From: Octopus sinensis
Taxonomy: Eukaryota
Length of the DNA stretch: 64,000 bases
Direction of reading: 5' to 3'
Assembly: GCF_006345805.1 (NCBI RefSeq)
Contig: NC_042997.1
Span: 34,596,001-34,660,000, forward strand
In this document: piece after piece, positions 1,990 to 59,228 of the stretch
Layout of the letters: each line of letters starts with the position of its first letter
Numbering within the stretch: position 1 is the first letter of the stretch
Program-made: the position numbers and the translations under genes
The notes under the pieces: model-generated
Database searches by the model: none
Seen by the model: only the letters and a program-made list of their open reading frames with translations
What the model was told of the DNA's origin: nothing

Positions 1990-2880
1990 ACCCTTGCAAG
2001 TTATGTAGACGATACAAAAGTCTCTCAGAGGCTACAAAATCCCTGGAGATGTTGCACACCTGCAATAGGAGTTAGATACAATATGCAAGTGGACTGAGGA
2101 CAATAACATGTAGCTTAATACTGAAAACTTCCGAGCCTTTGGATACCAACACACGAAGCTGAATGAAATGCAGAGAGGATACACTGACCCAGAAGGAATT
2201 GCAATCCCAGAGTCAAAATTAGTGTGCGACCTGGGCATTGACATGAGTAATGATGTATCTTTCCTGGTGCGAATTACTACGTTGGCATTAAGATGTAGGC
2301 GGTTGGTCGCATAGTTCCTTAGAACTTCTAGAACGAGAGGACAAGAAACCATGATGGTCCTCTGGAGGACATTTGTCTTCAGTTGCTTAGACTATAGCTC
2401 CCAACTATGGTCACCATACAATGTAAAATTAACGGCAGAAATCGAAGCAATTCAGATAATTTTAGAGCGATATGTCAGCTACTGGAAAACGTTGAAAAAT
2501 TTAAGATTCTATTTCCTTGAACGAAGGCGGTGAGATATGCAGTGATATAGATCTGGAAAATCCTTGAAGGTCTTATATCAAACGTTGTAATTGAAATTTA
2601 CACAAACAGAATCGGGTACCATTGTATAGTGCCAAAGATCCCAAGATCACCATCAAAGTACAGGAATAGATATTGCAACAGTTTGGATTTCAAGGAGCGA
2701 TAGGTGTTCAATCTCCCGTCAAAATGCCTGATCGAACTACATAGGGTAGATGTAGGTATCTTCAAAACAAAACTGAATTTCTTCCTGTCATCAGTTCTGG
2801 ATGAACCTACTCTGCGGCAGGAAAGGTAGATGACGGTAGTAACATCAAACTTCTGCATTCACAAAATGCCACAAACCAGA
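1990..2880 (+). mobile_element. CR1-like LINE 3' fragment (RT C-terminus), decayed
   Basis: SYVDDTK at about 1999, LDTICKWTEDNNM, LWRTFVFSCLDYSSQLWSPY...EIEAIQ and a C-terminus matching the copy at 31934-32290; stops and frameshifts. Confidence 0.8.
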
Positions 2881-2970
2881 AAATGTTTCAAGTAGTGAAA
2901 ATGCTGCAACTGAAGCCAACAAAAGATGAAAGACAAACGATAAAAGATGCCGTATAAGCCACTCGTTTCT

Positions 2971-2971
<1 letters not shown>

Positions 2972-3033
<62 letters not shown>

Positions 3034-3282
3034 ACACACATGCACACACACACGCACACGCACACACACACACGCACACACACACATGCACAAACACACA
3101 CACATGCACACACACACATGCACACACACATGCACACACACACATGCACACACACACATGCACACACATATGCACACACACATGCACACACTCACACACA
3201 CATACACACACACACATGCACACACATACATGCACACACACACGCACACACACACGCACACACACACACGCACACACACACA
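2972..3282. repeat. (CA)n/CACATG-interrupted microsatellite
   Basis: Directly visible. Confidence 0.95.
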
Positions 3283-3892
3283 TTTAACTCTAATATATTA
3301 GACATAAAGAATATTTAGCTTTATACGTTTTTAAACAGACAAATCAAATAGGAAAGGCTACCCTACAAACCACAGAAAGACAAATCTTGCTGGACGAACG
3401 TACTACCAGTTTGCACTCATCTGTGTTCATTAGTTTATAGCACACGTCTTATCATAATTGACTGACTTTACTTAAACCCATATGACGTACTCTTTACTTT
3501 CATTGAAACTCATCTTCAACTTACCAGAGAAGAGATAAATTCCTTTACTCAAAATCTGTATCATAGCAAGATATTTCAACATGATTCGATGAATAAGTTA
3601 TTATTAAAGTAACAAATACTCAATACAAACATGAATGGAAGTTGCTATAATGATCTTGAGATAAAAGTTTACTATAAAAGAAAACATTTATTGCAGAATT
3701 GGGAGGGGTAGTGCATACAAACTTTGTATGGTGCCTGAGATAATATGTTGTTTATCCAGCGAACGAGAGATAGCGGCTTTATCTCAGTAATTTTAGTGTT
3801 CGTTTTCGCTTTCAAATTCGTGTTTATAAAGATATATTTATTATTGTTGTAAGAAAAATCTTCGCAATAAATTTATAACATAAACGGTTAAA

Positions 3893-20135: not shown

Positions 20136-20354
20136 TATCTTTCACTTGTTTCAGTCATTTTTTACTGTGACCATGCTGGAGTACCGCCTTTTAATTGAAG
20201 AAATCGACCCTTGGGCTTACACTTTGTAAGCCTGATACTTATTCTATCGATAACTTTAGCTGAACCGCTAAGCGATGCTGGTGGGACAGAAACAAACACA
20301 CAAATATATACATACATACATACACACACACATATATATACACACTTCTATCTT

Positions 20355-20411
<57 letters not shown>

Positions 20412-20423
20412 TATATATATATA

Positions 20424-20467
<44 letters not shown>

Positions 20468-20631
20468 ACGACAAGCTTCTTTCAGTTTCCGCCTGCCAAA
20501 TCCACTCACAAGTGTTTGTTCGATCCGATGCTATAGTAGAAAACACTTTCCCCAAGATGTCATGCAGTGGAACAGAACCCGGAACCATGTGATTCGAAAG
20601 CAATTTTCTTACCACCAGCCAAGCCTGCGCC
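20136..20631 (-). mobile_element. tRNA-derived SINE, family B with expanded internal (CT)/(TA) microsatellite
   Basis: Family B tail at 20136-20200 and head at 20560-20631. Confidence 0.85.
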
Positions 20632-20699
20632 TATGTGTGTGTGTGTGTCTAAGTCAAGATATATATAGCTATTGTATATATATATATATATATCTGCTG

Positions 20700-21700
20700 T
20701 TCTTTGACTATCGATTTCATGCAGTTTTGAAGATTATATTCCTTTTCCTTTGATTCAAGTAAAACTATAGATGCAATCGGTTGATTTTTCGATCTATCCT
20801 TTGAAATTTTGTTTACAGTTGTCTTTCTGTTACGAAGGAGCCTGTATTTAGTTTTGCTCATTGCCCCCAATGGAGTGTGATGTATCCGCAAAAGATTGTC
20901 AGGATGTATTGATGCTGCTTGGGGTGAGAGAGTGAGAGAAAAACCAATAAACAAGTGTAAGATCGTGGGTGATGGCTTTCCAGTTGGCATTGTGTAAATC
21001 AAAATGCAGCGAGATAGTTCCGCCTCACTTAAGGTTGCCGAAATCTAAAACTACAGCGAACCACATCATGGTGGGAAAGGAGAATCTTTTGCCACTGTAA
21101 TATTACGGATAGTGTTAGTGTTGTAATGACTAAACACTAAGTCCAATGTGCTTTGGTTGAATCATGTTAGTTCAAACCCGGGTTGGGACAGATAAAAATT
21201 TAATCATGAATTCGAGAAGTGATCCATTGCTGTTCTCTCTGGGGTTGAAATGCACACACCTGTCCTCAAGGTACGAGTAGACCAGTCAACCCGGGTGAAA
21301 TTAAAGTCACTCATTATTAAAACGTTATCAGATTGTCACTGCTGAATGAACGACTTTATATTTCTGAGGTAATTTTTGAAACACAGTTTTGGGTAGCCTG
21401 TTAGAGCCCGATTATTGCTAAATCGTTTTTCTTTTTCGCAATTCCCACAGGAGAATGTGACATTCGTATCTGCAGTAAAAGAGTCGTTCAAGAAAATAGC
21501 AACTCCCCACTTGCTTCTAGTGCGGTCTTCGCGAATGGTGGTATGATTCCTCACGTTTTCTTCAGCTTCCAAGTGAGCGTTGTTTTGGTGAGTCCCAGGA
21601 AGAACGAAGAAAGGAATATGATGAGGATGGTCGGTAATATAATCATGAATGAACTGAACTTTTCGAATTGAAGCATGGAGTGCTGCCTTGAGCATTCGAT
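20700..21700 (-). mobile_element. CR1-like LINE ORF2 endonuclease and linker relic
   Basis: KVQFIHD...PGTHQ...HLEAE...IREDRT..WGVAIFLND (APE N-terminus), and a linker KYRLLRNRKTTVNKIS...LLESKE; many stops. Confidence 0.6.
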
Positions 21701-24260: not shown

Positions 24261-24332
24261 AATAAATTAATTTACTCTGCTATGTATTGAGTACCTTATT
24301 AACTGTGGTTAACCAAGACTCAGCCCGGGACC

Positions 24333-24373
<41 letters not shown>

Positions 24374-24377
24374 GTAT

Positions 24378-24463
<86 letters not shown>

Positions 24464-24660
24464 GTGTGTGTCTGTGTGTATATGTGCGTGTGTGTAAATA
24501 AAAGCGCGAAACTGAGTATTACCAATTGGTGGATAGCTGATGACGATTACGGACATTTTGCTTGCATCCCTTTCGTTTGTGCATTCAGTATACGTCATTT
24601 CATTCGTTTTTTTTACCATATATTTTTCATTTACACCCACACACACACACATGTATATAT

Positions 24661-24802
24661 CGCCGCAGAAGTAGCTGTGCGATGGTTCCTGGTGTATAGC
24701 ACCTTGTTCAAGTGTTTTCTACTATAGACTCGGACCGACAAAGTCTTGTGAGTGGATTTGGTAGACGGAAACTAAAAAGAATCCCGTCTCATATGTATGT
24801 AT

Positions 24803-29090: not shown

Positions 29091-29136
<46 letters not shown>

Positions 29137-29153
29137 GAAGAAGAAGAAGAAAA

Positions 29154-29535
29154 AAATGCTTTCTAATTGATGTATCAATACCGGCAGATGACAACGTGTC
29201 TCTAAAAGAAATGGAGAAACTCTCAAAATACAAAGACCTGGAAATAGAGGTAACTAGAATGTGGAACCTGAAAACAAGAAACAATTCCTATCATAGTAGG
29301 TGCATTAGGCATGATAAAAAAAATATTCAGACAAATACATAACAAAAACACCAGGACTTACAAACACATATAACATACAGAAAATTGCACTACTAGGCAC
29401 TGCACACATCCTACGCAGAACACTTTCCATACAATAACCATCAGAGCATCACAACAAATCACAGCACATACCCAAGGCACACAGAGCTGCGCTCGGTAGT
29501 GAAGTGAAAGCACGCTATAAAAATAAAACTACTGA
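29154..29535 (+). mobile_element. R4/Dong-clade non-LTR element, 3' end (RLE domain and 3' UTR), inside (AAT)n
   Basis: CFLIDVSIPADDNV...EKLSKYKDLEIEVTRMW...IVGALG...QKIALLGTAHILRRTLSIQ* (stop 29435-29437); (AAT)n on both sides. Confidence 0.85.
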
Positions 29536-29906
29536 ATAATAATAATAATAATAATAATCAAGAAAATTGCTTTCTTAGTGAAGAATATTATGGAGAGAAT
29601 ATTTTTATTCTTACTTTTACCTTTTAAAATTCTATTCTACGACACTTGAAAATCATATTGATTTGAGGTTGGGAAAGAACAAAAAATAGATTTACAATGA
29701 TAAATCTATTAGACGAGACTTTAGTGATCTTTCCTGAAATGAATTGCGAATTCATGTCGAAACACTATTAGCCGAGCGGTATTCATTATTCAACGACATC
29801 AAAGTTTTTAGATACAAAGTTAATAGATACAGGCTAAAGGGAAACCATTATTTTTCATTAATTTGAAGAATACATAAATAAGACGTATAGCACAATGACG
29901 ATGGTA

Positions 29907-38130: not shown

Positions 38131-38799
38131 ACTGTAGCACAAAGAAACGGAAGGCCACGGGCCAAATCTATCTCATTCCTAATGGATGTATTTCTGCAAG
38201 TGCAGATACACATCCATTTGCATGAAGCAGATAAGCAAACTGACCCTGACAAAACTACTTTCATTCCACTCAAACATTCTGCACATGAAGAATCTATTTC
38301 TGAGCTCACTGAACACTAATTTCTCACTCTCTGCGAAAATGTACATTTTGAAGTACGCTTCAGTATGTTCCATTTAAAACAAGACAATCCTTCTGATGCA
38401 ATAAACGTTTATCTTATTGCTTTTACTTCTAAGATACCTAAGGTAATGGATACAATCATTAGAAATACTATTAAGCGAGCTGTGATTACATTGTCTGATG
38501 TAACTTTTAGGAAAGATTTTGAAAATCAGTTGTTGTTCTGTTACAAGGTTATGGCAGGCAGAAAGGCAACTCGATAGATATTTTCAAGAAACTGGTTTTC
38601 CACTTGTATGATCAAGTGTTGGACTTCACTTTTGCACTATCGCCATTGAAATGTTCACCCATATTGGTGGTAAGGTTCAGTGGTTGACCATATATTCACA
38701 AGAGATTTACTGACAGACAAAGGTCTGATGTCCTCAAATCCCTCGAGAATTATAGGCAGTGTTTGTTTGAAACCATGAGCAAAAACGATAGGAAGCCCT

Positions 38800-39225
38800 C
38801 CCACTATATGTATATTTCACGTCCATCAACCTTCCTCCTACTCTCTTATCAATTAATATATAATCCACCAAGACCCTATCCACTACTCTTCTTCCCTTCA
38901 CTCTCCACCATGTGAACTTATTCTTCTCCCACTTTTTAAACAGACTGTTCCCCACTTCCAACTCCTGCTCCATACACATTTCCAACAACCTCCTTCCACT
39001 CTCATTCCGATCAGGAACTCCATATTTTCCTTTTACATTTTCTACTTCCTCATTTTCCACTCGCGTATTCAAATAACCCAACGCCATGACATAACCACTT
39101 TTCCCCACCCTCTCCACACACTCAGTCAGTTCCAACCAGAACTCTTCTACTTTTTCCTTACTCCTTTCGTTCCCTGGACCATATGCGTTAAAAAGCACCC
39201 ACATCTCTCCTCCCCACCTCATCTT
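38800..39225 (-). mobile_element. RTE-type LINE AP-endonuclease fragment
   Basis: AYGPGNER...EEFW.EL.ECV...LGYLN(GDLN)TRV...GKYGVPDRNESGRRLLEMC..QEL.VGN..FKK...KFTW...VDYILI. Confidence 0.8.
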
Positions 39226-44609: not shown

Positions 44610-44855
44610 CTTGGGGTCGAACTGGAGATTCAGCCGGTCTTCTCCTCTAACTCCAGTCTCCCTGAACTACAAAAGATGATCTTGATGGTTACAGCCCATA
44701 TGCTACAGAAAGCACTCTCTATCTAAAATGGAATAAATGGGGGTGATAGTTTTCGCATGCATAGCGAAACAAAAGTGCCCTTGCTACTCTTGGCCTCCGG
44801 AGGGTGCCCGGTACTAAGGCAGCTGAAATAAAGTTATGATGAAAGGAAACCATAA

Positions 44856-44856
<1 letters not shown>
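44610..44856 (+). mobile_element. R4/Dong-like extreme 3' end and UTR
   Basis: ELQKMILMVTAHMLQKALSI* parallels the C-termini at 29154 and 52334; ends in (AAT)n. Confidence 0.6.
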
Positions 44857-45052
<196 letters not shown>

Positions 45053-45649
45053 GTAGTAATCTCCGCGCTGAATAACAACATGGATGTATTACACTGGGCT
45101 CCCCATTAAAAAACAAATCTAATCCAATAACATCGATGGACTTAGATAAAGGAACCTGTGGAAGACTTGAAAGAAGCGGTCTTTTAACGAAAATAATGAA
45201 AAAAAAAAATGCAGATTTTTTCCGCCATACAAAGCACAGTTTCTCCTATGCACGATGTCTCAGTGAAACATGTGCGAAACACACGCGATGTCAACACCGG
45301 AAAGTTACAAATTATAAAATAGAAATGGAAGAAAACAATAAGTACATAAATTGAGTAATTACGCATACACTCGAATGTCTATACAATTATATATATATAC
45401 ATTTTAATACCCATAGGACTTTACATACATCTCAATGTTTACACAATTACGTGAAATTTACAGGGCACACATTTACGCATATGAAAACAAGTGTCACAAT
45501 CGAAGCAAAAACAAAAACAAAATTTTATTCTTTTTTTCTCTTTATTTTTTGAACCAACACAGACAGAGTGAACCATTCATAAGTTTAAAAACATCACAAA
45601 AACCTATGCTTGGAGATAAATCTTTCAATACAAAAAACTACAAACGAAT

Positions 45650-48600
45650 ATAGATCTGTTAGCCTTAAGAAGTTACGTTACGAGCCATGTTTACATGCAG
45701 AGAACTCGGTGACGGTGTTGCCTCAAAAAATTGACCCTAAACAGACAAATCCGTCCCCTAATGTCAACGTCGAAGCTTGTCATGCCTCAGTGATAATAAA
45801 GCAAAGTACAAACCAGATTGGTCGTCGACCAGGTCACAAAGCGCTACGTACTCGATATAGATCTGTTAGCCTTAAGAAGTTACGTTACGAGCCATGTTTA
45901 CATGCAGAGAACTCGGTGACGGTGTTGCCTCAAAAAATTGACCCTAAACAGACAAATCCGTCCCCTAATGTCAACGTCGAAGCTTGTCATGCCTCAGTGA
46001 TAATAAAGCAAAGTACAAACCAGATTGGTCGTCGACCAGGTCACAAAGCGCTACGTACTCGATATAGATCTGTTAGCCTTAAGAAGTTACGTTACGAGCC
46101 ATGTTTACATGCAGAGAACTCGGTGACGGTGTTGCCTCAAAAAATTGACCCTAAACAGACAAATCCGTCCCCTAATGTCAACGTCGAAGCTTGTCATGCC
46201 TCAGTGATAATAAAGCAAAGTACAAACCAGATTGGTCGTCGACCAGGTCACAAAGCGCTACGTACTCGATATAGATCTGTTAGCCTTAAGAAGTTACGTT
46301 ACGAGCCATGTTTACATGCAGAGAACTCGGTGACGGTGTTGCCTCAAAAAATTGACCCTAAACAGACAAATCCGTCCCCTAATGTCAACGTCGAAGCTTG
46401 TCATGCCTCAGTGATAATAAAGCAAAGTACAACCAGATTGGTCGTCGACCAGGTCACAAAGCGCTACGTACTCGATATAGATCTGTTAGCCTTAAGAAGT
46501 TACGTTACGAGCCATGTTTACATGCAGAGAACTCGGTGACGGTGTTGCCTCAAAAAATTGACCCTAAACAGACAAATCCGTCCCCTAATGTCAACGTCGA
46601 AGCTTGTCATGCCTCAGTGATAATAAAGCAAAGTACAAACCAGATTGGTCGTCGACCAGGTCACAAAGCGCTACGTACTCGATATAGATCTGTTAGCCTT
46701 AAGAAGTTACGTTACGAGCCATGTTTACATGCAGAGAACTCGGTGACGGTGTTGCCTCAAAAAATTGACCCTAAACAGACAAATCCGTCCCCTAATGTCA
46801 ACGTCGAAGCTTGTCATGCCTCAGTGATAATAAAGCAAAGTACAAACCAGATTGGTCGTCGACCAGGTCACAAAGCGCTACGTACTCGATATAGATCTGT
46901 TAGCCTTAAGAAGTTACGTTACGAGCCATGTTTACATGCAGAGAACTCGGTGACGGTGTTGCCTCAAAAAATTGACCCTAAACAGACAAATCCGTCCCCT
47001 AATGTCAACGTCGAAGCTTGTCATGCCTCAGTGATGATAAAGCAAAGTACAAACCAGATTGGTCGTCGACCAGGTCACAAAGCGCTACGTACTCGATATA
47101 GATCTGTTAGCCTTAAGAAGTTACGTTACGAGCCATGTTTACATGCAGAGAACTCGGTGACGGTGTTGCCTCAAAAAATTGACCCTAAACAGACAAATCC
47201 GTCCCCTAATGTCAACGTCGAAGCTTGTCATGCCTCAGTGATAATAAAGCAAAGTACAAACCAGATTGGTCGTCGACCAGGTCACAAAGCGCTACGTACT
47301 CGATATAGATCTGTTAGCCTTAAGAAGCTACATTGCGAGCCATGTTTACATGCAGAGAACTCGGTGACGGTGTTGCCTCAAAAAATTGACCCTAAACAGA
47401 CAAATCCGTCCCCTAATGTCAACGTCGAAGCTTGTCATGCCTCAGTGATAATAAAGCAAAGTACAAACCAGATTGGTCGTCGACCAGGTCACAAAGCGCT
47501 ACGTACTCGATATAGATCTGTTAGCCTTAAGAAGTTACGTTACGAGCAATGTTTACATGCAGAGAACTCGGTGACGGTTGTTGCCTCAAAAAATTGACCC
47601 TAAACAGACAAATCCGTCCCCTAATGTCAACGTCGAAGCTTTTCATGCCTCAGTGATAATAAAGCAAAGTACAAACCAGATTGGTCGTCGACCAGGTCAC
47701 AAAGCGCTACGTACTCGATATAGATCTGTTAGCCTTAAGAAGTTACGTTACGAGCCATGTTTACATGCAGAGAACTCGGTGACGGTGTTGCCTCAAAAAA
47801 TTGACCCTAAACAGACAAATCCGTCCCCTAATGTCAACGTCGAAGCTTGTCATGCCTCAGTGATAATAAAGCAAAGTACAAACCAGATTGGTCGTCGACC
47901 AGGTCACAAAGCGCTACGTACTCGATATAGATCTGTTAGCCATAAGAAGTTACGTTACGAGCCATGTTTACATGCAGAGAACTCGGTGACGGTGTTGCCT
48001 CAAAAAATTGACCCTAAACAGACAAATCCGTCCCCTAATGTCAACGTCGAAGCTTGTCATGCCTCAGTGATAATAAAGCAAAGTACAAACCAGATTGGTC
48101 GTCGACCAGGTCACAAAGCGCTACGTACTCGATATAGATCTGTTAGCCTTAAGAAGCTACATTGCGAGCCATGTTTACATGCAGAGAACTCGGTGACGGT
48201 GTGTTGCCTCAAAAAATTGACCCTAAACAGACAAATCCGTCCCCTAATGTCAACGTCGAAGCTTGTCATGCCTCAGTGATAATAAAGCAAAGTACAAACC
48301 AGATTGGTCGTCGACCAGGTCACAAAGCGCTACGTACTCGATATAGATCTGTTAGCCTTAAGAAGTTACGTTACGAGCCATGTTTACATGCAGAGAACTC
48401 GGTGACGGTGTTGCCTCAAAAAATTGACCCTAAACAGACAAATCCGTCCCCTAATGTCAACGTCGAAGCTTGTCATGCCTCAGTGATAATAAAGCAAAGT
48501 ACAAACCAGATTGGTCGTCGACCAGGTCACAAAGCGCTACGTACTCGATATAGATCTGTTAGCCTTAAGAAGTTACGTTACGAGCCATGTTTACATGCAG

Positions 48601-50826
48601 AGAACTCGGTGACGGTGTTGCCTCAAAAAATTGACCCTAAACAGACAAATCCGTCCCCTAATGTCAACGTCGAAGCTTGTCATGCCTCAGTGATAATAAA
48701 GCAAAGTACAAACCAGATTGGTCGTCGACCAGGTCACAAAGCGCTACGTACTCGATATAGATCTGTTAGCCTTAAGAAGTTACGTTACGAGCCATGTTTA
48801 CATGCAGAGAACTCGGTGACGGTGTTGCCTCAAAAAATTGACCCTAAACAGACAAATCCGTCCCCTAATGTCAACGTCGAAGCTTGTCATGCCTCAGTGA
48901 TAATAAAGCAAAGTACAAACCAGATTGGTCGTCGACCAGGTCACAAAGCGCTACGTACTCGATATAGATCTGTTAGCCTTAAGAAGTTACGTTACGAGCC
49001 ATGTTTACATGCAGAGAACTCGGTGACGGTGTTGCCTCAAAAAATTGACCCTAAACAGACAAATCCGTCCCCTAATGTCAACGTCGAAGCTTGTCATGCC
49101 TCAGTGATAATAAAGCAAAGTACAAACCAGATTGGTCGTCGACCAGGTCACAAAGCGCTACGTACTCGATATAGATCTGTTAGCCTTAAGAAGTTACGTT
49201 ACGAGCCATGTTTACATGCAGAGAACTCGGTGACGGTGTTGCCTCAAAAAATTGACCCTAAACAGACAAATCCGTCCCCTAATGTCAACGTCGAAGCTTG
49301 TCATGCCTCAGTGATAATAAAGCAAAGTACAAACCAGATTGGTCGTCGACCAGGTCACAAAGCGCTACGTACTCGATATAGATCTGTTAGCCTTAAGAAG
49401 TTACGTTACGAGCCATGTTTACATGCAGAGAACTCGGTGACGGTGTTGCCTCAAAAAATTGACCCTAAACAGACAAATCCGTCCCCTAATGTCAACGTCG
49501 AAGCTTGTCATGCCTCAGTGATGATAAAGCAAAGTACAAACCAGATTGGTCGTCGACCAGGTCACAAAGCGCTACGTACTCGATATAGATCTGTTAGCCT
49601 TAAGAAGCTACATTGCGAGCCATGTTTACATGCAGAGAACTCGGTGACGGTGTTGCCTCAAAAAATTGACCCTAAACAGACAAATCCGTCCCCTAATGTC
49701 AACGTCGAAGCTTGTCATGCCTCAGTGATAATAAAGCAAAGTACAAACCAGATTGGTCGTCGACCAGGTCACAAAGCGCTACGTACTCGATATAGATCTG
49801 TTAGCCTTAAGAAGTTACGTTACGAGCCATGTTTACATGCAGAGAACTCGGTGACGGTGTTGCCTCAAAAAATTGACCCTAAACAGACAAATCCGTCCCC
49901 TAATGTCAACGTCGAAGCTTGTCATGCCTCAGTGATAATAAAGCAAAGTACAAACCAGATTGGTCGTCGACCAGGTCACAAAGCGCTACGTACTCGATAT
50001 AGATCTGTTAGCCTTAAGAAGTTACGTTACGAGCCATGTTTACATGCAGAGAACTCGGTGACGGTGTTGCCTCAAAAAATTGACCCTAAACAGACAAATC
50101 CGTCCCCTAATGTCAACGTCGAGCTTGTCATGCCTCAGTGATAATAAAGCAAAGTACAAACCAGATTGGTCGTCGACCAGGTCACAAAGCGCTACGTACT
50201 CGATATAGATCTGTTAGCCTTAAGAAGTTACGTTACGAGCCATGTTTACATGCAGAGAACTCGGTGACGGTGTGTTGCCTCAAAAAATTGACCCTAAACA
50301 GACAAATCCGTCCCCTAATGTCAACGTCGAAGCTTGTCATGCCTCAGTGATAATAAAGCAAAGTACAAACCAGATTGGTCGTCGACCAGGTCACAAAGCG
50401 CTACGTACTCGATATAGATCTGTTAGCCTTAAGAAGCTACATTGCGAGCCATGTTACATGCAGAGAACTCGGTGACGGTGTTGCCTCAAAAAATTGACCC
50501 TAAACAGACAAATCCGTCCCCTAATGTCAACGTCGAAGCTTGTCATGCCTCAGTGATAATAAAGCAAAGTACAAACCAGATTGGTCGTCGACCAGGTCAC
50601 AAAGCGCTACGTACTCGATATAGATCTGTTAGCCTTAAGAAGCTACATTGCGAGCAATGTTTACATGCAGAGAACTCGGAGACGATTTTCTCTCTAAAAA
50701 TTAACCCTAAACAGACACATACGTTTCCTAATGCCAACGTCGCTGCTCGCCATACCTCACTGTTAACAAAGCAAACTACAAACCGGAATGGTCATCGACC
50801 GGATCACAAAGGGCCACGTACTCGAA
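45650..50826 (+). repeat. Tandem array of 25 x 207-bp units with a stop-free 69-codon frame
   Basis: TAGATCTG recurs every 207 nt from 45651 to 50621 (24 x 207 plus net 2 nt from six indels). Unit reads RYRSVSLKKLRYEPCLHAENSVTVLPQKIDPKQTNPSPNVNVEACHASVIIKQSTNQIGRRPGHKALRT. The last unit diverges after about 50680. Confidence 0.98.
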
Positions 50827-50829
50827 TGA

Positions 50830-52774
50830 TGAACCAGATTCGATTCGAAAAAATCAGCTACTGGTTCAAATCTTCCCGACGCACAAGAGCTGGAAGTACC
50901 CTACCACCGGAATATTCCAACAGATGGCCATCCATGCTCGCCATTAAATAACCAAAAGACAAAGAATGAAAAATGGTCTAGAGAAGATAATAAAGAAATT
51001 CTTACGGCCTTCTACCATGCCATATATTTCCCCACAGATAAATCTAATACTGTACAAACCTACTTAAACTGGAGACAGAAACACCTTGAAGTAAGACCCT
51101 ACATAAGCAGTAACAAACTTGCCAACGTCAGAAGAAACATTGTAAAAAAAATTACTAACTGAAGTAGAAATTGACCAAATTAAACAAGCAGTAGGGAATA
51201 AATAGAACGAAGCTGCAGCTAAAGAAGATATTACAGAGGAAAAAATAATAGACCAGCCCAGGGATGATGCAAATGCAGTAATGATTAAAAGAGTTAATGT
51301 AAGTGATAGGCAAAGGGAAATACTTCTGAACCAACCATAAACACTAAGGTAGATGAAAATCAAATAGATGAAGAAAATCACACAGAAATTGACCCAACAG
51401 AACTACATGTCCTAAAAAATCAAATGAGTGAATGGCTGAAAATTAAAGAAACCAGTATGAATGAACGCGATACTCTCCCAAAAATTCGGAATTCTAACCA
51501 AAACCTGAAAATAATTGGTAAAATCCGCCTTGCACTTAAGGATATAATTTCACCACCCTAAGGCAGATACAGAACGACTCTATCTGCCAAGAAAAGAGGG
51601 AGGCCTTGGTCTTTTGCAACTGGCAATAACAATGAAGATTGCTACAATTGGCCTAGACACCTACCTGAAAAACTCTGAGGACTGGATGTTAAAACTTGTC
51701 TCAAAACATGAAAACAAGAAAGCATCATACTCAGTCAAAAAACAGGCAAAGGAATATCTAAGTGAATTCCGAATACAACAAATTCCAGAATTAGACGTAC
51801 TAGAAACATGCACAGAAAAAGCTAAGCGCATGAAAATCCGTGTTAAAACTGTTGCCTTAGATATTCTGACTGATAAATGGCAAGAAAAACCTCTCAATGG
51901 CAAATACCCAAAGAGAGCGAATAATGCCAATGGCTAATGGCCTCTGGCTTAAAATCTGACACAGAAGAGTTTATTATAGCAGCCCAAGATCAATGCCTAC
52001 CCACAAGGAACTACCAGGCCAACATATTAAATAATGGCAGTATTCCAACATGTCGTGTATGTCAACAACAAAAGGAAACCATTGATCATGTTGTCTCCAT
52101 GTGCAGTCTTCTAGCACCTACAGAATATCTCAACAGGCATGATAGAGCTACACGATATATTCACTGGGTAATTTGCAAAATCCAGGTGTGCCCCATGATA
52201 AAAACTGGTGGAAACATAAACCACCTCCAGTACTTGAAAATGATCACATCTCACTCCTCTGGGACTTCACCATTCAAACTGACAGAAAGATAGATGCAAA
52301 TAAGCTAGGCAAAAATCATGCCTCCTCATTGATATGACTGTCCAAATCGATATAAACGTATCTGTCAAGACCTACCAAAAACTGAGCAACTATAAAGATC
52401 TTGAAAGAGAAATTTGCAAAATGTGGAACCTGAAGACTAAAACAATACCTGTTGTCATAGGCACCTTAGCAATGATAGCAAAAGGGGTTGATTGCTACCT
52501 AGCTCAAGATACCAGGAATCTCCAAAATGGCAGAAATTCAAAAGATAATGCTCATGGGAACTGTCCATATCCTACGTGAAATACTGTCTATGGAATCTCA
52601 AATTTTAAAACAAACACATAATTTTCTTATGGTTTCTTAAACATTCTCTAGAACAAAACAATGTTCAAAGCCAAATATATGGCATAACACCAAAATGAAC
52701 TTCTAACTTGTTGTCTCTTGAGGTCTCTGTGTAAGACTTGGAGCCAACTTGTACAAATGCGAAGCAAAAGTCAA
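50830..52774 (+). mobile_element. R4/Dong-clade non-LTR element lacking the RT domain
   Basis: The N-terminus KWSREDNKEILTAFYHA...NKLANVRRNI is joined at about 51550 to post-RT HHPKADTERLYLPRKEGGLGLLQL. Then come the Zn knuckle CRVCQQQKETIDHVVSMC..RHD and the RLE LLIDMTVQID...KLSNYKDL...GTAHILR; frameshifts present. Confidence 0.88.
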
Positions 52775-52933
<159 letters not shown>

Positions 52934-53789
52934 ATAAGGGAAGAAATATCAGCAATATGACTAAAAAGGTAATATTTGTTTCATTTCAATTTACCAGTAA
53001 TTTTTGAAAGCAGAAAATGTTATCAACATGATTAATTACCATCACTTAACCAAACAAGTGTATAATCCCAGAAAAAAAGTAAAATTAATTCTTTTGCAGA
53101 TGACGAAAATGATAACCCTTACTTGTAAGATCATCCTTGGAGTCAGTTTACAGAAAAATCAAAAAAGGTGTACATTGTTTTGAATAAAATATTCATATCG
53201 TTCGGTTAACAGCGTATAATTAGAAGAAAACAATGTAATTAACAATGACACAAGACACAGCAACTGGATGAAGGTTCGTCCTTTATCATTTATTCATATT
53301 GCCATGAAGCAGAGATATAGATTGGAATACACATCTCTTTAACGTGCATTTCGACATGACTAAGCAAAGAATATGTAAACACAAGAAATATCAGCTCGAA
53401 AACAAAAATTAAGAAAGCATTTAGAAGAAAATTGCAATCGTATCAAAAGATACTAAATTAAGGAAGACATGTACAATACTTTTTTCTCTGGAAGTATGGT
53501 GTTGCAAGTAAACCACGTAACGCACATCAAGAAAGTGTTCAGGGATGAGATGCTGGGATTAACTATGGTGAAAAATTAAAATTCCAACAAATAAAATATT
53601 TCCAACGATATACTAAAATATCAATAGAAAAAGAAGGAAGCTGAGGAAGGAAAATGTAACATTGAAATTCACAACAAGGAAATAAGAATTGATAAGTAAT
53701 GTCACAGTATCTTTAAGCTAATATTTAATCAAGATATCACTGCATATATTATAACAGAAAAGGTTAATTATATTTGAAAAGCTGTAAAT

Positions 53790-56782: not shown

Positions 56783-56837
<55 letters not shown>

Positions 56838-56880
56838 CATAATTAAATCTCAGAATGAGATTGAAACAGTAATCGCTCGA

Positions 56881-56946
56881 TAATGTAAAGTATAGAAGCC
56901 ATCTTATCATGTGGTTAACCATGATAAGATGGCTTCTATACTTTAC

Positions 56947-56950
<4 letters not shown>
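56881..56950. repeat. Perfect 31-bp-arm hairpin embedded in (TA)n
   Basis: 56881-56911 pairs with 56920-56950; loop TGGTTAAC. Confidence 0.9.
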
Positions 56951-56999
<49 letters not shown>

Positions 57000-57007
57000 T
57001 AATATAT

Positions 57008-57061
<54 letters not shown>

Positions 57062-57070
57062 AATGTATAT

Positions 57071-57734
57071 ATACGATATAGTGTATATTTAAACACATAG
57101 AGAATCGACTTATAGGAATTCTACGCGCTAGAAAGAACAGCTAAGTTCTATGACCACTGGAAATGTAAATTTTAATTGAATATTATTAATTTTAATTAAA
57201 TTCCATTTCCCTTTGGTATGATTAAATACTGTAAGTTTTGGGATAATTTTCGGTTAATAAGTTGGCGGTTTTTTATTGTAGCCAACGAAGGACTGCGTCT
57301 GCGCAGTAGATTTGAAAAGTTGGCTCGTATAAACACGAGACAGGAAACCGAGTTTGTCTTGTGTGGATATGTTTAACACTATGTTGGACCTGCTGAAGAA
57401 AATCAAACCTTGTGGGTTCTCCATGACTCGCTAAAAGATGATTAGAAACCAATTGGTCCAGGAAACTAGATGGTAAAAGTTTTTCATCCCCAAATTTATT
57501 ACTGTCGAATTTTATCCCGAATTTTTTGTGGTCATATAAATTAGCTGTTCTTTCTAGCGCGTAGAATCCCTATAAATGGGTTCTCTATGTGTTTAAATAC
57601 ACACTATATCGTATGGCTAATATATGGTCTTTTTGACTAAAATTTTTTTACGCGTTAGACCACTGGAAATGTATATTTTAATTGAATGTTTTTAATTTTA
57701 ATTAAATTCCATTTACCTTTGATATGATTAAATA

Positions 57735-57736
<2 letters not shown>
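57071..57736. mobile_element. (TA)n-embedded element with inverted and direct repeats (possible Penelope pLTR derivative)
   Basis: Inverted 57071-57158 / 57528-57614; direct 57152-57230 / 57658-57736; contains a hammerhead motif. Confidence 0.65.
57389..57462 (+). ncRNA. Type I hammerhead ribozyme motif
   Basis: CCTG / CTGAAGA / A-AATCA...TGATT-A / GAAAC-CAATTG-GTC / CAGG, with palindromic ACCAATTGGT stem III. Confidence 0.6.
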
Positions 57737-57781
<45 letters not shown>

Positions 57782-59228
57782 GTGTGTGTGTATACGCAAC
57801 CATATATCACATACACACACACCCATGCACACACACACACACACATATACATACATATATATATGTGTGTATATATATATGTGTGTGTGTCTGTATATAT
57901 ATATATATACTTACACATATAAATACACATAAGCGCCTATGCAGGCAGGCCTATACAGAAATCTATACACATACCACTCATTTTATTCTGATATCACTTT
58001 ATCAGTAGTTTTCTTTTCGCTATGTCTATTGTTTGTCTTTTCGTAATCCTTTTTAACTAGCTTTCTTAGCTCACCTAGTATCTGATAAACGGCTTCGTCT
58101 TATAAAACACGCTATCTCATATTAACAGATGCAATGCAATTATTTCGGTGACAAGGTTGTCGATGTGTAAAGAAACATTTTGACATCACATAATAGATCA
58201 ACAAATAAACGAACAATAAAATATAACAGGTTTTTTGTATCTCCTTAAATGGCTGAAATGACTTTCTTGATGTAATCGTTACTTTCGTTTCTTCTTCTAT
58301 TCAATTTTTTTCTTTGTCTGTATTGTTAAATTGAACTGATCGTGTACATAGGTCTACGTAGTCGCTTAATCTGCTAGAAACATCAGTCACATGTCACTTA
58401 AATAATCACATAAAAAGAAAGGGTATATTGAATGATTTTATCATAAATGTACAATTTTTGAATAAATTTCGGAATAGTTACGTCTGCTCAACCATTGCCC
58501 ATCCTGGGTTAGCAACAACAAGGGAAGAGAAAGAAAGAAACCAGTTAAGTGTCGGATGTGGGGGGTAAAGAAGCAGCCGGCGATAGCGTAATGGACGAAT
58601 GCTGCAACATTAATCACAAGAAATATGACAAAAGGAAGGAGAGAAGGGTACAACAAAGTTCTTCTGCGTTTAGTAGAAAATTGCTAACCAAAATACACAA
58701 GTAGTGGTTTGAAACGACTCAGTATAGTTAAGTTAAGAGCGACCAGTCTCTCAGCGCCAACCGCCTGTGTAATAGAGAAGCAGACATAATTGTTTAATAA
58801 TAATATCCGCGATAAACCATTTCAAATATTCTTTTGATGTGTGGTATGCCTGAGTACTCTCCGTTTATGAGAGAGTCTGGAATTTGCAGAACATTATAGA
58901 AAAAATATAATACGTAAAGCATATGAAAGATAATCAATAAAAAGTGAAGAAGTAAAGAAGAAATTCACCTAAAAAAGGATAGTACGCCAGAAGGTACCCC
59001 AGAATCTGACCATCCGGTGGTCAGTATCAATGTTCCCACAGGAAACTTTACTTTATCTACATTGTGCTCTCAGTCTTAAGACACATTCACCTGCAGTTCC
59101 CACCCTCTGGTGTAAATGGCATTTCAAGATAAAGATGACTTATTTGCAGAAAGGTAACTTTGTTCACATTCTTTTGAGAATCGGTTAAAATATTGCAGTC
59201 AGATAACTGATACAAGTAAAAGAGTATA

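What the first reader, a model, noticed from the sequence alone, without database searches (positions are those of the whole stretch)
45650..50951. Homogenised 25 x 207-bp array with an open 69-codon frame grading into a retrotransposon 5' end
Seen: units are nearly identical, a multiple of 3 and stop-free in one frame (659 aa uninterrupted at 48162-50141), with 12 CpG per unit. The last unit switches at about 50680 to a clearly diverged homologue (QTTNRNGHRPDHKGPRTR). Its frame continues to 50951, about 20 nt before the Dong KWSRE motif, which is in a different frame. Inference: a segment of the Dong 5' region or N-terminal ORF was amplified and homogenised into a young satellite, and the terminal unit keeps the older sequence. 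The alternative is an expressed repeat protein of about 1,700 aa if the six indels are read errors.
Basis: partly seen in the sequence, partly recalled or inferred. Interest (0 to 1): 0.8.

Follow-up and report, generated by a model that had tools for sequence, protein, structure and literature searches.

The report
Retrotransposon 5' segment amplified into tandem array
A dead jumping gene of the Dong type has had a 207-base piece of its front end copied head-to-tail 25 times; this is a clean but ordinary example of a tandem repeat array born from a mobile element, not a repeat-protein gene.

Summary
There are 25 head-to-tail units of 207 bp at 45648-50825. Sixteen are identical to the consensus, each has 12 CpG, and one frame is stop-free.

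The array lies inside one inserted block, 45049-52774, bracketed by (AAT)n microsatellites that each contain exactly (GAT)21. The block consists of:
- a 597-bp leader;
- the array;
- a decayed Dong-type ORF that lacks the whole reverse-transcriptase domain;
- a 3' UTR.

The last ~22 codons of each unit are homologous to the first ~22 codons of the ORF of TAA-microsatellite-specific relatives. The array's open frame is that ORF's frame.

A diverged copy of the same element occurs in three public read sets. It has the same leader followed by exactly one gapless 207-nt unit and then the same ATGATGAACCAG. So the single unit is the progenitor state, and the array arose in the window's lineage.

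The last unit is homogenised with the array in its first 62 nt and 19% diverged in the remaining 145 nt.

Coding is not supported:
- nonsynonymous to synonymous codon changes are 26:2;
- most units have no in-frame ATG;
- two units share a frame-breaking +GT insertion;
- no real protein homologues were found.

Promoter-monomer function remains possible but untested.

The parts
44855..45048 (.). Left flanking compound microsatellite: (AAT)15 ... (ATA)3 (ATG/GAT)21 (ATA)17
   Evidence: (GAT)21 lies at 44938-45000.
45049..45647 (+). Non-repeated leader, the 5' UTR of this Dong lineage. The element's 5' terminus is about ATCTCCGCGCTGAA.
   Evidence: It is homologous (75-81% identity, 11 indel events) to the leader of L009/L011, which starts at the same ATCTCC next to a microsatellite. 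It has no similarity to the unit.
45648..50617 (+). 24 homogenised 207-bp units (5' UTR end plus the first ~22 family ORF codons). Six units carry indels.
50618..50825 (+). Unit 25. Its first 62 nt are homogenised with the array and its last 145 nt are 19% diverged. Its tail encodes ...NGHRPDHKGPRTR, which is homologous to the family N-terminus.
50784..50843 (+). Two RNA hairpins conserved in the family at the ORF start. Hairpin 1 pairs 50784-50793 with 50812-50818. Hairpin 2 pairs 50822-50827 with 50838-50843 and has the loop GATGAACCAG. The array's 3' boundary falls in the 5' strand of hairpin 2.
50826..51548 (+). N-terminal ORF remnant: ATGATG at 50826, a +1 frameshift in the A6 run at 50848-50853, KWSRE at 50971-50985, and several stops and frameshifts.
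51548..51549 (+). Internal deletion junction. Relative's residue ~200 is joined to residue ~790, so the whole reverse-transcriptase domain is missing (~1.8 kb).
51549..52592 (+). C-terminal ORF remnant: end of the RT region, a CCHC zinc knuckle at 52051-52104, and a restriction-like endonuclease region. It has multiple stops and frameshifts.
52593..52774 (+). 3' UTR, ending ...GCAAAAGTCAAA.
52775..52934 (.). Right flanking compound microsatellite: (ATA)7 (ATG/GAT)21 ATA TTA (ATA)16 ATG (ATA)6
   Evidence: (GAT)21 lies at 52799-52861.

Best explanation
The array is a non-coding tandem amplification of a 207-bp segment from the 5' end of one Dong-type element. Dong-type means a TAA-microsatellite-specific non-LTR retrotransposon with a restriction-like endonuclease, related to R2 and R4. 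This copy is dead and has lost its reverse-transcriptase domain. The amplified segment spans the last ~145 nt of the 5' UTR, as judged from relatives, and the first ~22 codons of the family ORF. It ends one base before an ATGATG.

Shown:
- the progenitor state is leader, one unit, then ORF;
- the array's open frame is the ORF's own frame;
- the duplication arose in the window's lineage after it split from the single-unit copy.

Inferred history:
1. A first duplication occurred between short CGA(A)T matches at the two outer boundaries.
2. The two units then diverged for a long time without coding constraint, reaching 15-19%.
3. Recent expansion to 24 near-identical units followed, by unequal exchange or replication slippage. 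Some steps spanned several units: variants recur 10-12 units apart.
4. Homogenisation has spread into the first 62 nt of the ORF-proximal unit.

The stop-free frame is largely inherited. About 22 codons were ORF, and the rest is a T-poor sense strand, or possibly an N-terminal ORF extension in this lineage. The array has no demonstrated function.
For: - Array anatomy.
- Dong-type identity. The block is flanked by (AAT)n. Relatives in Oculina patagonica and in ENA assemblies are flanked by (TAA)n and carry a single ~1,150-aa ORF with RVT_1 and zf-RVT domains; their best solved-structure matches are R2 proteins at 3e-31. The literature reports that Dong elements target TAA repeats (PMC3812793).
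- Homology of the unit tail to the family N-terminus.
- Single-unit progenitor copy: P0207 and L009/L011/L012. The unit there is gapless and 207 nt long, 75.7% identical to the array consensus and 72-73% to unit 25, while consensus against unit 25 is 80.7%.
- No coding constraint. Codon changes are 26 nonsynonymous to 2 synonymous, and differences fall at codon positions 2>1>3. dN/dS is 1.7. The codon-position pattern against L009 is flat, 15/17/21.
- The +GT indel shared by units 13 and 23, and the variant spacing.
- Homogenisation boundary.
- RT deletion.
Against: - Zero indels in 207 nt against the single-unit copy, where about 3.6 are expected from the flanking rate (P about 0.03).
- dN/dS of 0.48-0.58 in the open frame against that copy, compared with 0.65-1.47 in control frames.
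- In L009, an ATG 13 codons upstream is in frame with the unit. Together these three points hint that the segment was once coding in this lineage.
- The identical (GAT)21 in both flanks suggests a young insertion, which fits poorly with long decay in place.
- Only one array and one other copy could be examined.
- Array homogeneity and copy number could be partly shaped by assembly polishing.
Confidence: 0.78

Rival explanations
1. The block is a recently retrotransposed copy of a long-lived non-autonomous Dong derivative. Its 5' monomers act like mouse L1 monomers: each unit adds promoter activity to an element type that otherwise depends on host read-through transcription.
For: - The internal deletion keeps both ends of the element, which is the classic architecture of a non-autonomous derivative.
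- The window copy and the 20-25% diverged L009-type copies share a +1 frameshift, so their progenitor was already ORF-broken.
- Both flanks carry an identical (GAT)21, as in a young ~130-bp target-site duplication.
- L011 also has (GAT)n-(AWT)n just upstream of the same 5' terminus.
- The units are CpG-rich (observed/expected 1.16) while the ORF remnant is at 0.37.
- Mouse L1 5' UTRs are tandem ~200-bp promoter monomers (PMC9022269).
Against: - The only other copy available has a single unit.
- A 597-bp non-repeated leader precedes the array, so elements would not start in a monomer.
- The unit includes former ORF codons.
- CpG richness is inherited (11 CpG in the L009 unit), and CpGs are not hypermutable here (5 of 29 differences fall on 13.5% of positions). 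It is therefore not evidence for a promoter.
- The shared flank and shared frameshift are equally well explained by orthology.
- No expression data are available.
Confidence: 0.15
2. The array encodes an expressed repeat protein of about 1,700 aa, and the six indels are read errors.
For: - One frame is stop-free in every unit, in unit 25 and in the L009 unit.
- Three of the six indels are single-base deletions in short homopolymers.
Against: - 26:2 nonsynonymous to synonymous codon changes.
- No in-frame ATG except in units 7 and 19.
- The +GT frameshift is identical in units 13 and 23 and is therefore inherited.
- No homologue among 5.8 billion proteins.
- In 1.84 billion representatives, the only real hit is the pseudo-ORF of the single-unit copy.
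- No Pfam match.
- The downstream ORF is broken and lacks RT.
Confidence: 0.02
3. The array is an ordinary satellite unrelated to Dong that merely abuts the element, and its ORF is due to chance.
For: A stop-free frame arises by chance in 10-15% of shuffles.
Against: - The unit tail is homologous to the family N-terminus in the right frame.
- An independent copy has leader, one unit and ORF in the same order.
- No copy of the unit was found elsewhere in the window or in metagenome contigs.
Confidence: 0.01

Closest known systems
Dong (R4 clade) non-LTR retrotransposons specific for (TAA)n microsatellites
   Same: - Insertion in (AAT/TAA)n.
- A single ORF with a C-terminal CCHC knuckle and a restriction-like endonuclease region.
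- Relatives with an RT domain that match solved R2 proteins.
   Different: - This copy lacks the RT domain and is riddled with stops.
- Its 5' UTR is long (about 600 nt of leader) and carries a 25-unit array.
- Placement in the R4 clade by RT phylogeny was not tested.
- The 5' HDV-like ribozyme reported for Bombyx mori Dong (PMC3774820) was not detected.
Mouse L1 5' UTR monomers (A, Tf, Gf; PMC9022269)
   Same: - Tandem ~200-bp CpG-rich units upstream of the ORF of a LINE.
- The ORF-proximal unit differs from the others.
   Different: - L1 monomers are purely UTR, are separated from ORF1 by a tether, start the element, and are present in all young copies with proven promoter activity.
- Here the unit contains former ORF codons and abuts ATGATG.
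- A unique leader precedes it.
- The only other copy has one unit.
- Promoter activity is untested.
Satellite or minisatellite DNA derived from internal segments of transposable elements (review PMC9659126: L1 ORF2, L1 3' UTR, CR1 3' UTR/ORF2, HeT-A/TART 3' UTR)
   Same: A TE segment was amplified in tandem and homogenised, and the progenitor TE sequence is still recognisable.
   Different: - The source is the 5' end of an endonuclease-bearing, microsatellite-specific LINE, which is not among the listed cases.
- The array is still attached to its parent element.
- Spread to other loci is unknown.
R2 5' RNA elements and non-autonomous R2 derivatives (SIDEs). This comparison is from my own knowledge, not tested.
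   Same: - A structured RNA at the start of the ORF.
- A deletion derivative that keeps both ends of the element.
   Different: - The function of the two hairpins found here is unknown.
- Trans-mobilisation has not been shown.

Membership tests
Dong / R4-clade retrotransposon | Insertion within (TAA)n microsatellites | tested here: met
   The block 45049-52774 is flanked by (AAT)n on both sides. Relatives L001-L008 are flanked by TAA/AAT repeats. A second 5'-truncated copy at 29151-29534 also lies in (AAT)n.
Dong / R4-clade retrotransposon | Single ORF with RT followed by a CCHC zinc knuckle and a PD-(D/E)XK restriction-like endonuclease | tested here: inconclusive
   The C-terminal region aligns with relatives at 45-50% identity, and zf-RVT is a weak match. 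The RT domain is deleted in this copy. A full-length relative has RVT_1 and zf-RVT and matches R2 proteins.
Dong / R4-clade retrotransposon | RT phylogeny places it in the R4 clade | not tested
   No RT remains in the window copy, and no reference R4 or Dong sequences were available in the tools.
Dong / R4-clade retrotransposon | HDV-like self-cleaving ribozyme at the 5' end (B. mori Dong, PMC3774820) | tested here: inconclusive
   There was no Rfam match in the window or in relatives. My own descriptor found nothing, but it was never validated on a positive control.
LINE 5' promoter monomer array (mouse L1 type) | Tandem ~200-bp units at the 5' end, upstream of the ORF | tested here: met
LINE 5' promoter monomer array (mouse L1 type) | Units are pure UTR, separated from the ORF by a tether, and the element begins in a monomer | tested here: not met
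   The unit tail is homologous to ORF codons. The array abuts ATGATG. A 597-bp unique leader precedes it.
LINE 5' promoter monomer array (mouse L1 type) | Arrays are a family trait with variable monomer number among copies | tested here: inconclusive
   The only other copy retrievable has one unit. The source genome could not be searched.
LINE 5' promoter monomer array (mouse L1 type) | Each monomer has promoter activity | not testable with these tools
   This needs CAGE, RNA-seq or reporter assays.
TE-derived satellite DNA | Monomer is homologous to a segment of a transposable element | tested here: met
TE-derived satellite DNA | Arrays at many loci or in high copy number, detached from the TE | not testable with these tools
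   There is no other copy in the window. Two metagenome scans found 0 hits, and no paper contains the unit's k-mers. The source genome is not available.
Repeat-protein gene | Start codon, uninterrupted frame, purifying selection and homologues | tested here: not met

The most novel reading that the evidence does not exclude
A Dong-type LINE normally has no promoter of its own; it is co-transcribed and cut out by a ribozyme. In this reading, one such lineage has convergently evolved an L1-like array of 5' monomers and propagates as a non-autonomous, RT-deleted element. It would insert with very long target-site duplications, because both endonuclease cuts can fall anywhere in a compound (AAT)(GAT)(AAT) microsatellite.
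Probability: 0.12. Interest if true: 0.6.

Novelty: new member of a known kind. Interest (0 to 1): 0.35.

Why it matters
This is a clean, datable snapshot of how a tandem array is born from a mobile element. The progenitor (one unit), an old two-unit stage (15-19% divergence), a recent burst to 24 near-identical units, and a homogenisation front inside the last unit are all visible at one locus.

It also extends TE-derived arrays to the 5' end of an endonuclease-bearing, microsatellite-specific LINE.

Two by-products may interest retrotransposon specialists:
- a covariation-supported two-hairpin RNA element at the ORF start of this family;
- a (GAT)21 marker inside the target microsatellite that exposes a ~130-bp flanking duplication.

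It is also a warning for annotation: long stop-free frames across TE-derived repeats are easily called as proteins.

Tried and rejected
- Unit peptide against 5.8 billion proteins: nothing.
- Pfam on the unit peptide: nothing.
- Exact look-up of eight window ORFs: none is in the collection.
- Two metagenome scans for unit 20- to 23-mers: 0 hits.
- Unit k-mers in papers: 0 hits.
- Rfam at gathering and E-value thresholds on the window and on relatives: no ribozyme or other family.
- Minimum-free-energy folding of the unit: z = +0.74 and -0.67, so no unusual stability.
- A home-made HDV-like descriptor: no hits anywhere, but it was unvalidated and is therefore uninformative.
- Leader against unit by local alignment with shuffles: no similarity, so the leader is not decayed monomers.
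- The idea that the unit equals the element's whole 5' end, because 143-162 nt of UTR plus 22 codons is about 207. I dropped it after relatives showed 5' UTRs of 142 to ~1,017 nt and L009 showed the leader to be part of the element.
- nhmmer with a profile of relatives' 5' UTR and ORF start: only a weak hit at the expected ORF-start position (E = 0.31), and nothing for the unit's first 145 nt.
- P0206, a 1,302-aa 'homologue' at E = 2e-14. It turned out to be a 67-bp satellite with no Dong nearby, so the hit is inflated by repeats. P0208 is a bacterial repeat protein and P0209 another satellite ORF.
- Paralogues of the flanks, to find an empty site: none.
- Search for the SRA run numbers in papers: irrelevant hit only. 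The organism remains unidentified.
Full report
OBSERVATION

Tandem Repeats Finder reports one array at 45648-50825, with period 207, 25.0 copies, 98% matches and score 9947. Anchoring on the unit start gives 25 units. Nineteen are 207 nt long and six are 206, 208 or 209 nt. Sixteen units equal the consensus, which has 12 CpG and 44% GC.

One sense frame has no stop. The other five frames have 4-6 stops per unit. The 659-aa ORF at 48162-50141 is real.

Unit 25 (50618-50824) has 32 substitutions against the consensus and no indel. Against the neighbouring unit type it has 1 difference in its first 62 nt and 28 in its last 145 nt, which is 19.3%.

A stop-free frame is weak evidence by itself. It appears in 10-15% of composition-matched shuffles in any of six frames, and in 5% in the sense frames.

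CONTEXT

The array is part of one block, 45049-52774. It is bracketed by compound microsatellites at 44855-45048 and 52775-52934. Each flank contains exactly (GAT)21, and these are the only (GAT) runs of five or more in the 64-kb window.

Inside the block, in order:
- A 597-bp non-repeated leader.
- The array.
- An N-terminal ORF remnant: ATGATG at 50826 and KWSRE at 50971-50985.
- A deletion junction at 51548/51549. It joins a relative's residue ~200 to residue ~790 and so removes the whole RT domain.
- A C-terminal remnant with a CCHC knuckle (52051-52104) and an endonuclease-like region, carrying many stops and frameshifts.
- A ~180-bp 3' UTR.

IDENTITY OF THE ELEMENT

The stitched ORF remnants find 85 proteins at up to 50% identity. 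Some are named from the cnidarians Oculina patagonica and Clytia hemisphaerica.

The loci of these relatives are flanked by (TAA/AAT)n. They carry a single ORF of about 1,150 aa with RVT_1 and zf-RVT domains. The best solved-structure matches are R2 retrotransposon proteins at 3e-31. The literature states that Dong elements target TAA microsatellites (PMC3812793).

I therefore call the element Dong-type on the basis of target and architecture. Clade placement by RT phylogeny was not tested.

WHAT THE UNIT IS

An Oculina N-terminus aligns to 50848-51147 in the KWSRE frame. Removing one A from the A6 run at 50848-50853 joins the array's open frame to that frame. This gives ...GPRTRMMNQIRFEKSATGSN...KWSRE, against the family consensus ...GPRPSxxNQAEVEKSATGTNS...KWTREE.

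I built a profile from 25 relatives' N-termini and scored the window against it:
- The tail of unit 25, before the frameshift, scores 24.0 bits in the open frame. This ranks first among about 15,000 shuffled frames; the next best is 11.6.
- Restricted to columns inside unit 25, the score is 12.1 bits, ranking second.
- The consensus unit's tail scores 5-6.6 bits in the same frame, ranking 19-24 of 15-18 thousand.

So the last ~22 codons of every unit descend from the first ~22 codons of the family ORF. The array's frame is the ORF frame.

THE PROGENITOR

I ran an exhaustive phmmer search of a unit dimer against 1.84 billion representative proteins. It found one real hit, P0207 (96 aa, 56% identity, E = 4.5e-14).

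Its locus was assembled independently in three read sets. L009, L011 and L012 come from SRR11869384, SRR11869394 and SRR11869390 and are 98.7-99.6% alike. The locus reads, in order:
- a microsatellite;
- ATCTCC and a 650-nt leader, 75-81% identical to the window leader, with 11 indel events;
- exactly one 207-nt unit, gapless against the window;
- ATGATGAACCAG, followed by KWSMEE.

The L009 unit is 75.7% identical to the array consensus and 72-73% identical to unit 25. Consensus against unit 25 is 80.7% over the non-homogenised 145 nt.

Three conclusions follow:
- The leader is the element's genuine 5' UTR, with a shared 5' terminus.
- One unit is the ancestral state.
- The duplication arose in the window's lineage.

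Polarised changes are 19 private to unit 25, 11 private to the array consensus, and 40 on the L009 branch or shared by the window's two sequences. After the first duplication, two units therefore diverged for a long time before the recent burst.

IS IT CODING?

Evidence against coding:
- Consensus against unit 25 shows 26 nonsynonymous and 2 synonymous codon changes. Differences fall at codon positions 2>1>3, and dN/dS is 1.7.
- Against L009 the codon-position pattern is flat, 15/17/21.
- The open frame has no Met except in units 7 and 19.
- The six indels include an identical +GT in units 13 and 23. That one is inherited, not a read error.
- There is no Pfam match and no homologue in the word-indexed search of 5.8 billion proteins.
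- The apparent 1,302-aa homologue P0206 is a 67-bp satellite with no Dong nearby.

Residual hints that the segment was once ORF in this lineage:
- Zero indels in 207 nt, where about 3.6 are expected (P about 0.03).
- dN/dS of 0.48-0.58 against L009, compared with 0.65-1.47 in control frames.
- An ATG 13 codons upstream that is in frame in L009 but shifted by 4 nt in the window.

These hints concern the ancestor, not the present array.

GROWTH OF THE ARRAY

Variants recur at offsets of 10-12 units: ATG in units 7 and 19; the C/A/G type in units 9, 13, 20 and 24; and +GT in units 13 and 23. This suggests a multi-unit duplication by unequal exchange.

The outer boundaries share CGAAT: ACGAAT at the leader/unit 1 boundary and TCGAAT at the unit 25/ORF boundary. 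This fits a microhomology-mediated first duplication, which is an inference.

CpG CONTENT

CpG observed/expected is 1.16 in the array, 1.24 in unit 25, 1.12 in the leader, 0.37 in the ORF remnant and 0.67-0.82 in the background. Intact relatives' ORFs are at 0.50-0.55.

Nine of 11 CpGs are shared between unit 25 and its neighbours. CpG positions are not hypermutable: 5 of 29 differences fall on 13.5% of positions. By my own count on the sequence, the L009 unit has 11 CpG.

CpG richness is therefore inherited from a CpG-rich conserved element. It is not evidence for a promoter.

A CONSERVED RNA ELEMENT (BY-PRODUCT)

In six relatives the 69 nt at the ORF start are 84% identical, and variable sites are spread 9/7/8 over the three codon positions. 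The KWTREE block is 65% identical with a 13/10/17 spread.

RNAalifold predicts two hairpins there. I counted pairs on nine sequences, including the window and L011:
- 92.6% of cells pair, against 25-46% when the 3' partners are slid by 1-3 columns.
- Six pairs show compensatory double changes.
- No shuffle out of 500 reaches the observed score.

The window keeps hairpin 2 with a different stem (TCGAAT/ATTCGA, 50822-50843). The array's 3' boundary lies in its 5' strand. Hairpin 1 is degraded in the array consensus, with 4 of 7 pairs remaining by my own count on the alignment.

UNRESOLVED

The identical (GAT)21 flanks look like a young ~130-bp target-site duplication. This is mechanistically plausible if the endonuclease's two cuts fall in the (ATA)n runs on either side of the GAT block.

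Three things are old, however:
- the ORF remnant is decayed;
- unit 25 is 19% diverged;
- the 20-25% diverged L011 copy has (GAT)n-(AWT)n at the same 5' terminus and shares a +1 frameshift with the window (16 nt against 15 nt between AACCAG and TCAGC).

Two readings remain:
- The block is a recent copy of an old non-autonomous lineage.
- The locus is old, the L009-type contigs are orthologous, and the flanks stayed equal by gene conversion or by chance.

I favour amplification in place but cannot decide without the whole genome.

VERDICT

The protein alternative is rejected. This is a new example of a known kind, a tandem array derived from a transposable element. Promoter-monomer function remains a minority possibility.

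Noticed in passing
44938-45000 and 52799-52861: Both microsatellite flanks of the element contain exactly (GAT)21. These are the only (GAT) runs of five or more in the window. They form a perfect direct repeat of at least 75 bp, about 130 bp near-perfect. The likely cause is a very long target-site duplication, but its apparent youth conflicts with the decay of the element.
   Followed up: partly
window 50784-50843; L002-L008 ORF starts; L011 843-918: The family has a two-hairpin RNA element overlapping ORF codons ~9-30. It is conserved at the nucleotide level (84% identity, third codon positions as conserved as the others) and has six pairs with compensatory changes. Its function is unknown. 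It may be a 5' protein-binding or translation element like the one described for R2; that comparison is from my own knowledge.
   Followed up: yes
29093-29558: There is a second, 5'-truncated Dong-like 3' fragment (29151-29534; CLLIDVSIP...KYKDLEIEV...) lying between (AAT)14(GAA)n and (AAT)8. It is only 71% identical over 97 nt to the main element and has a different 3' UTR, so it belongs to another Dong lineage in the same genome.
   Followed up: partly
window 50832-50858; L011 ~893-918: The window copy and the L009-type copies share a +1 frameshift relative to all other relatives (16 nt against 15 nt between AACCAG and TCAGC). Their common progenitor was therefore already ORF-disrupted.
   Followed up: partly
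L002, L003, L004, L005, L006, L007, L008 (5' ends): In relatives, the 5' UTR length, measured from the (TAA)n junction to the ATG, varies from 142 nt to about 1,017 nt. The proximal ~130 nt is shared by L003, L004, L005 and L007.
   Followed up: partly
L010 8273-11855: A 67-bp satellite (53.6 copies) in an ENA contig was called as a 1,302-aa protein. It matched the unit dimer at E = 2e-14 purely through summed repeats. This is a caution for repeat-against-repeat protein searches.
   Followed up: yes
whole window, e.g. 2845-3283, 20211-20753, 24287-24727, 56786-57904: The window is unusually rich in (CA)n, (TA)n and (AAT)n microsatellites and shows no clear host gene. The 162-aa ORF at 38734-39222 (- strand) has no Pfam match. 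The organism was not identified. Relatives of the element are from cnidarians and octopus.
   Followed up: no
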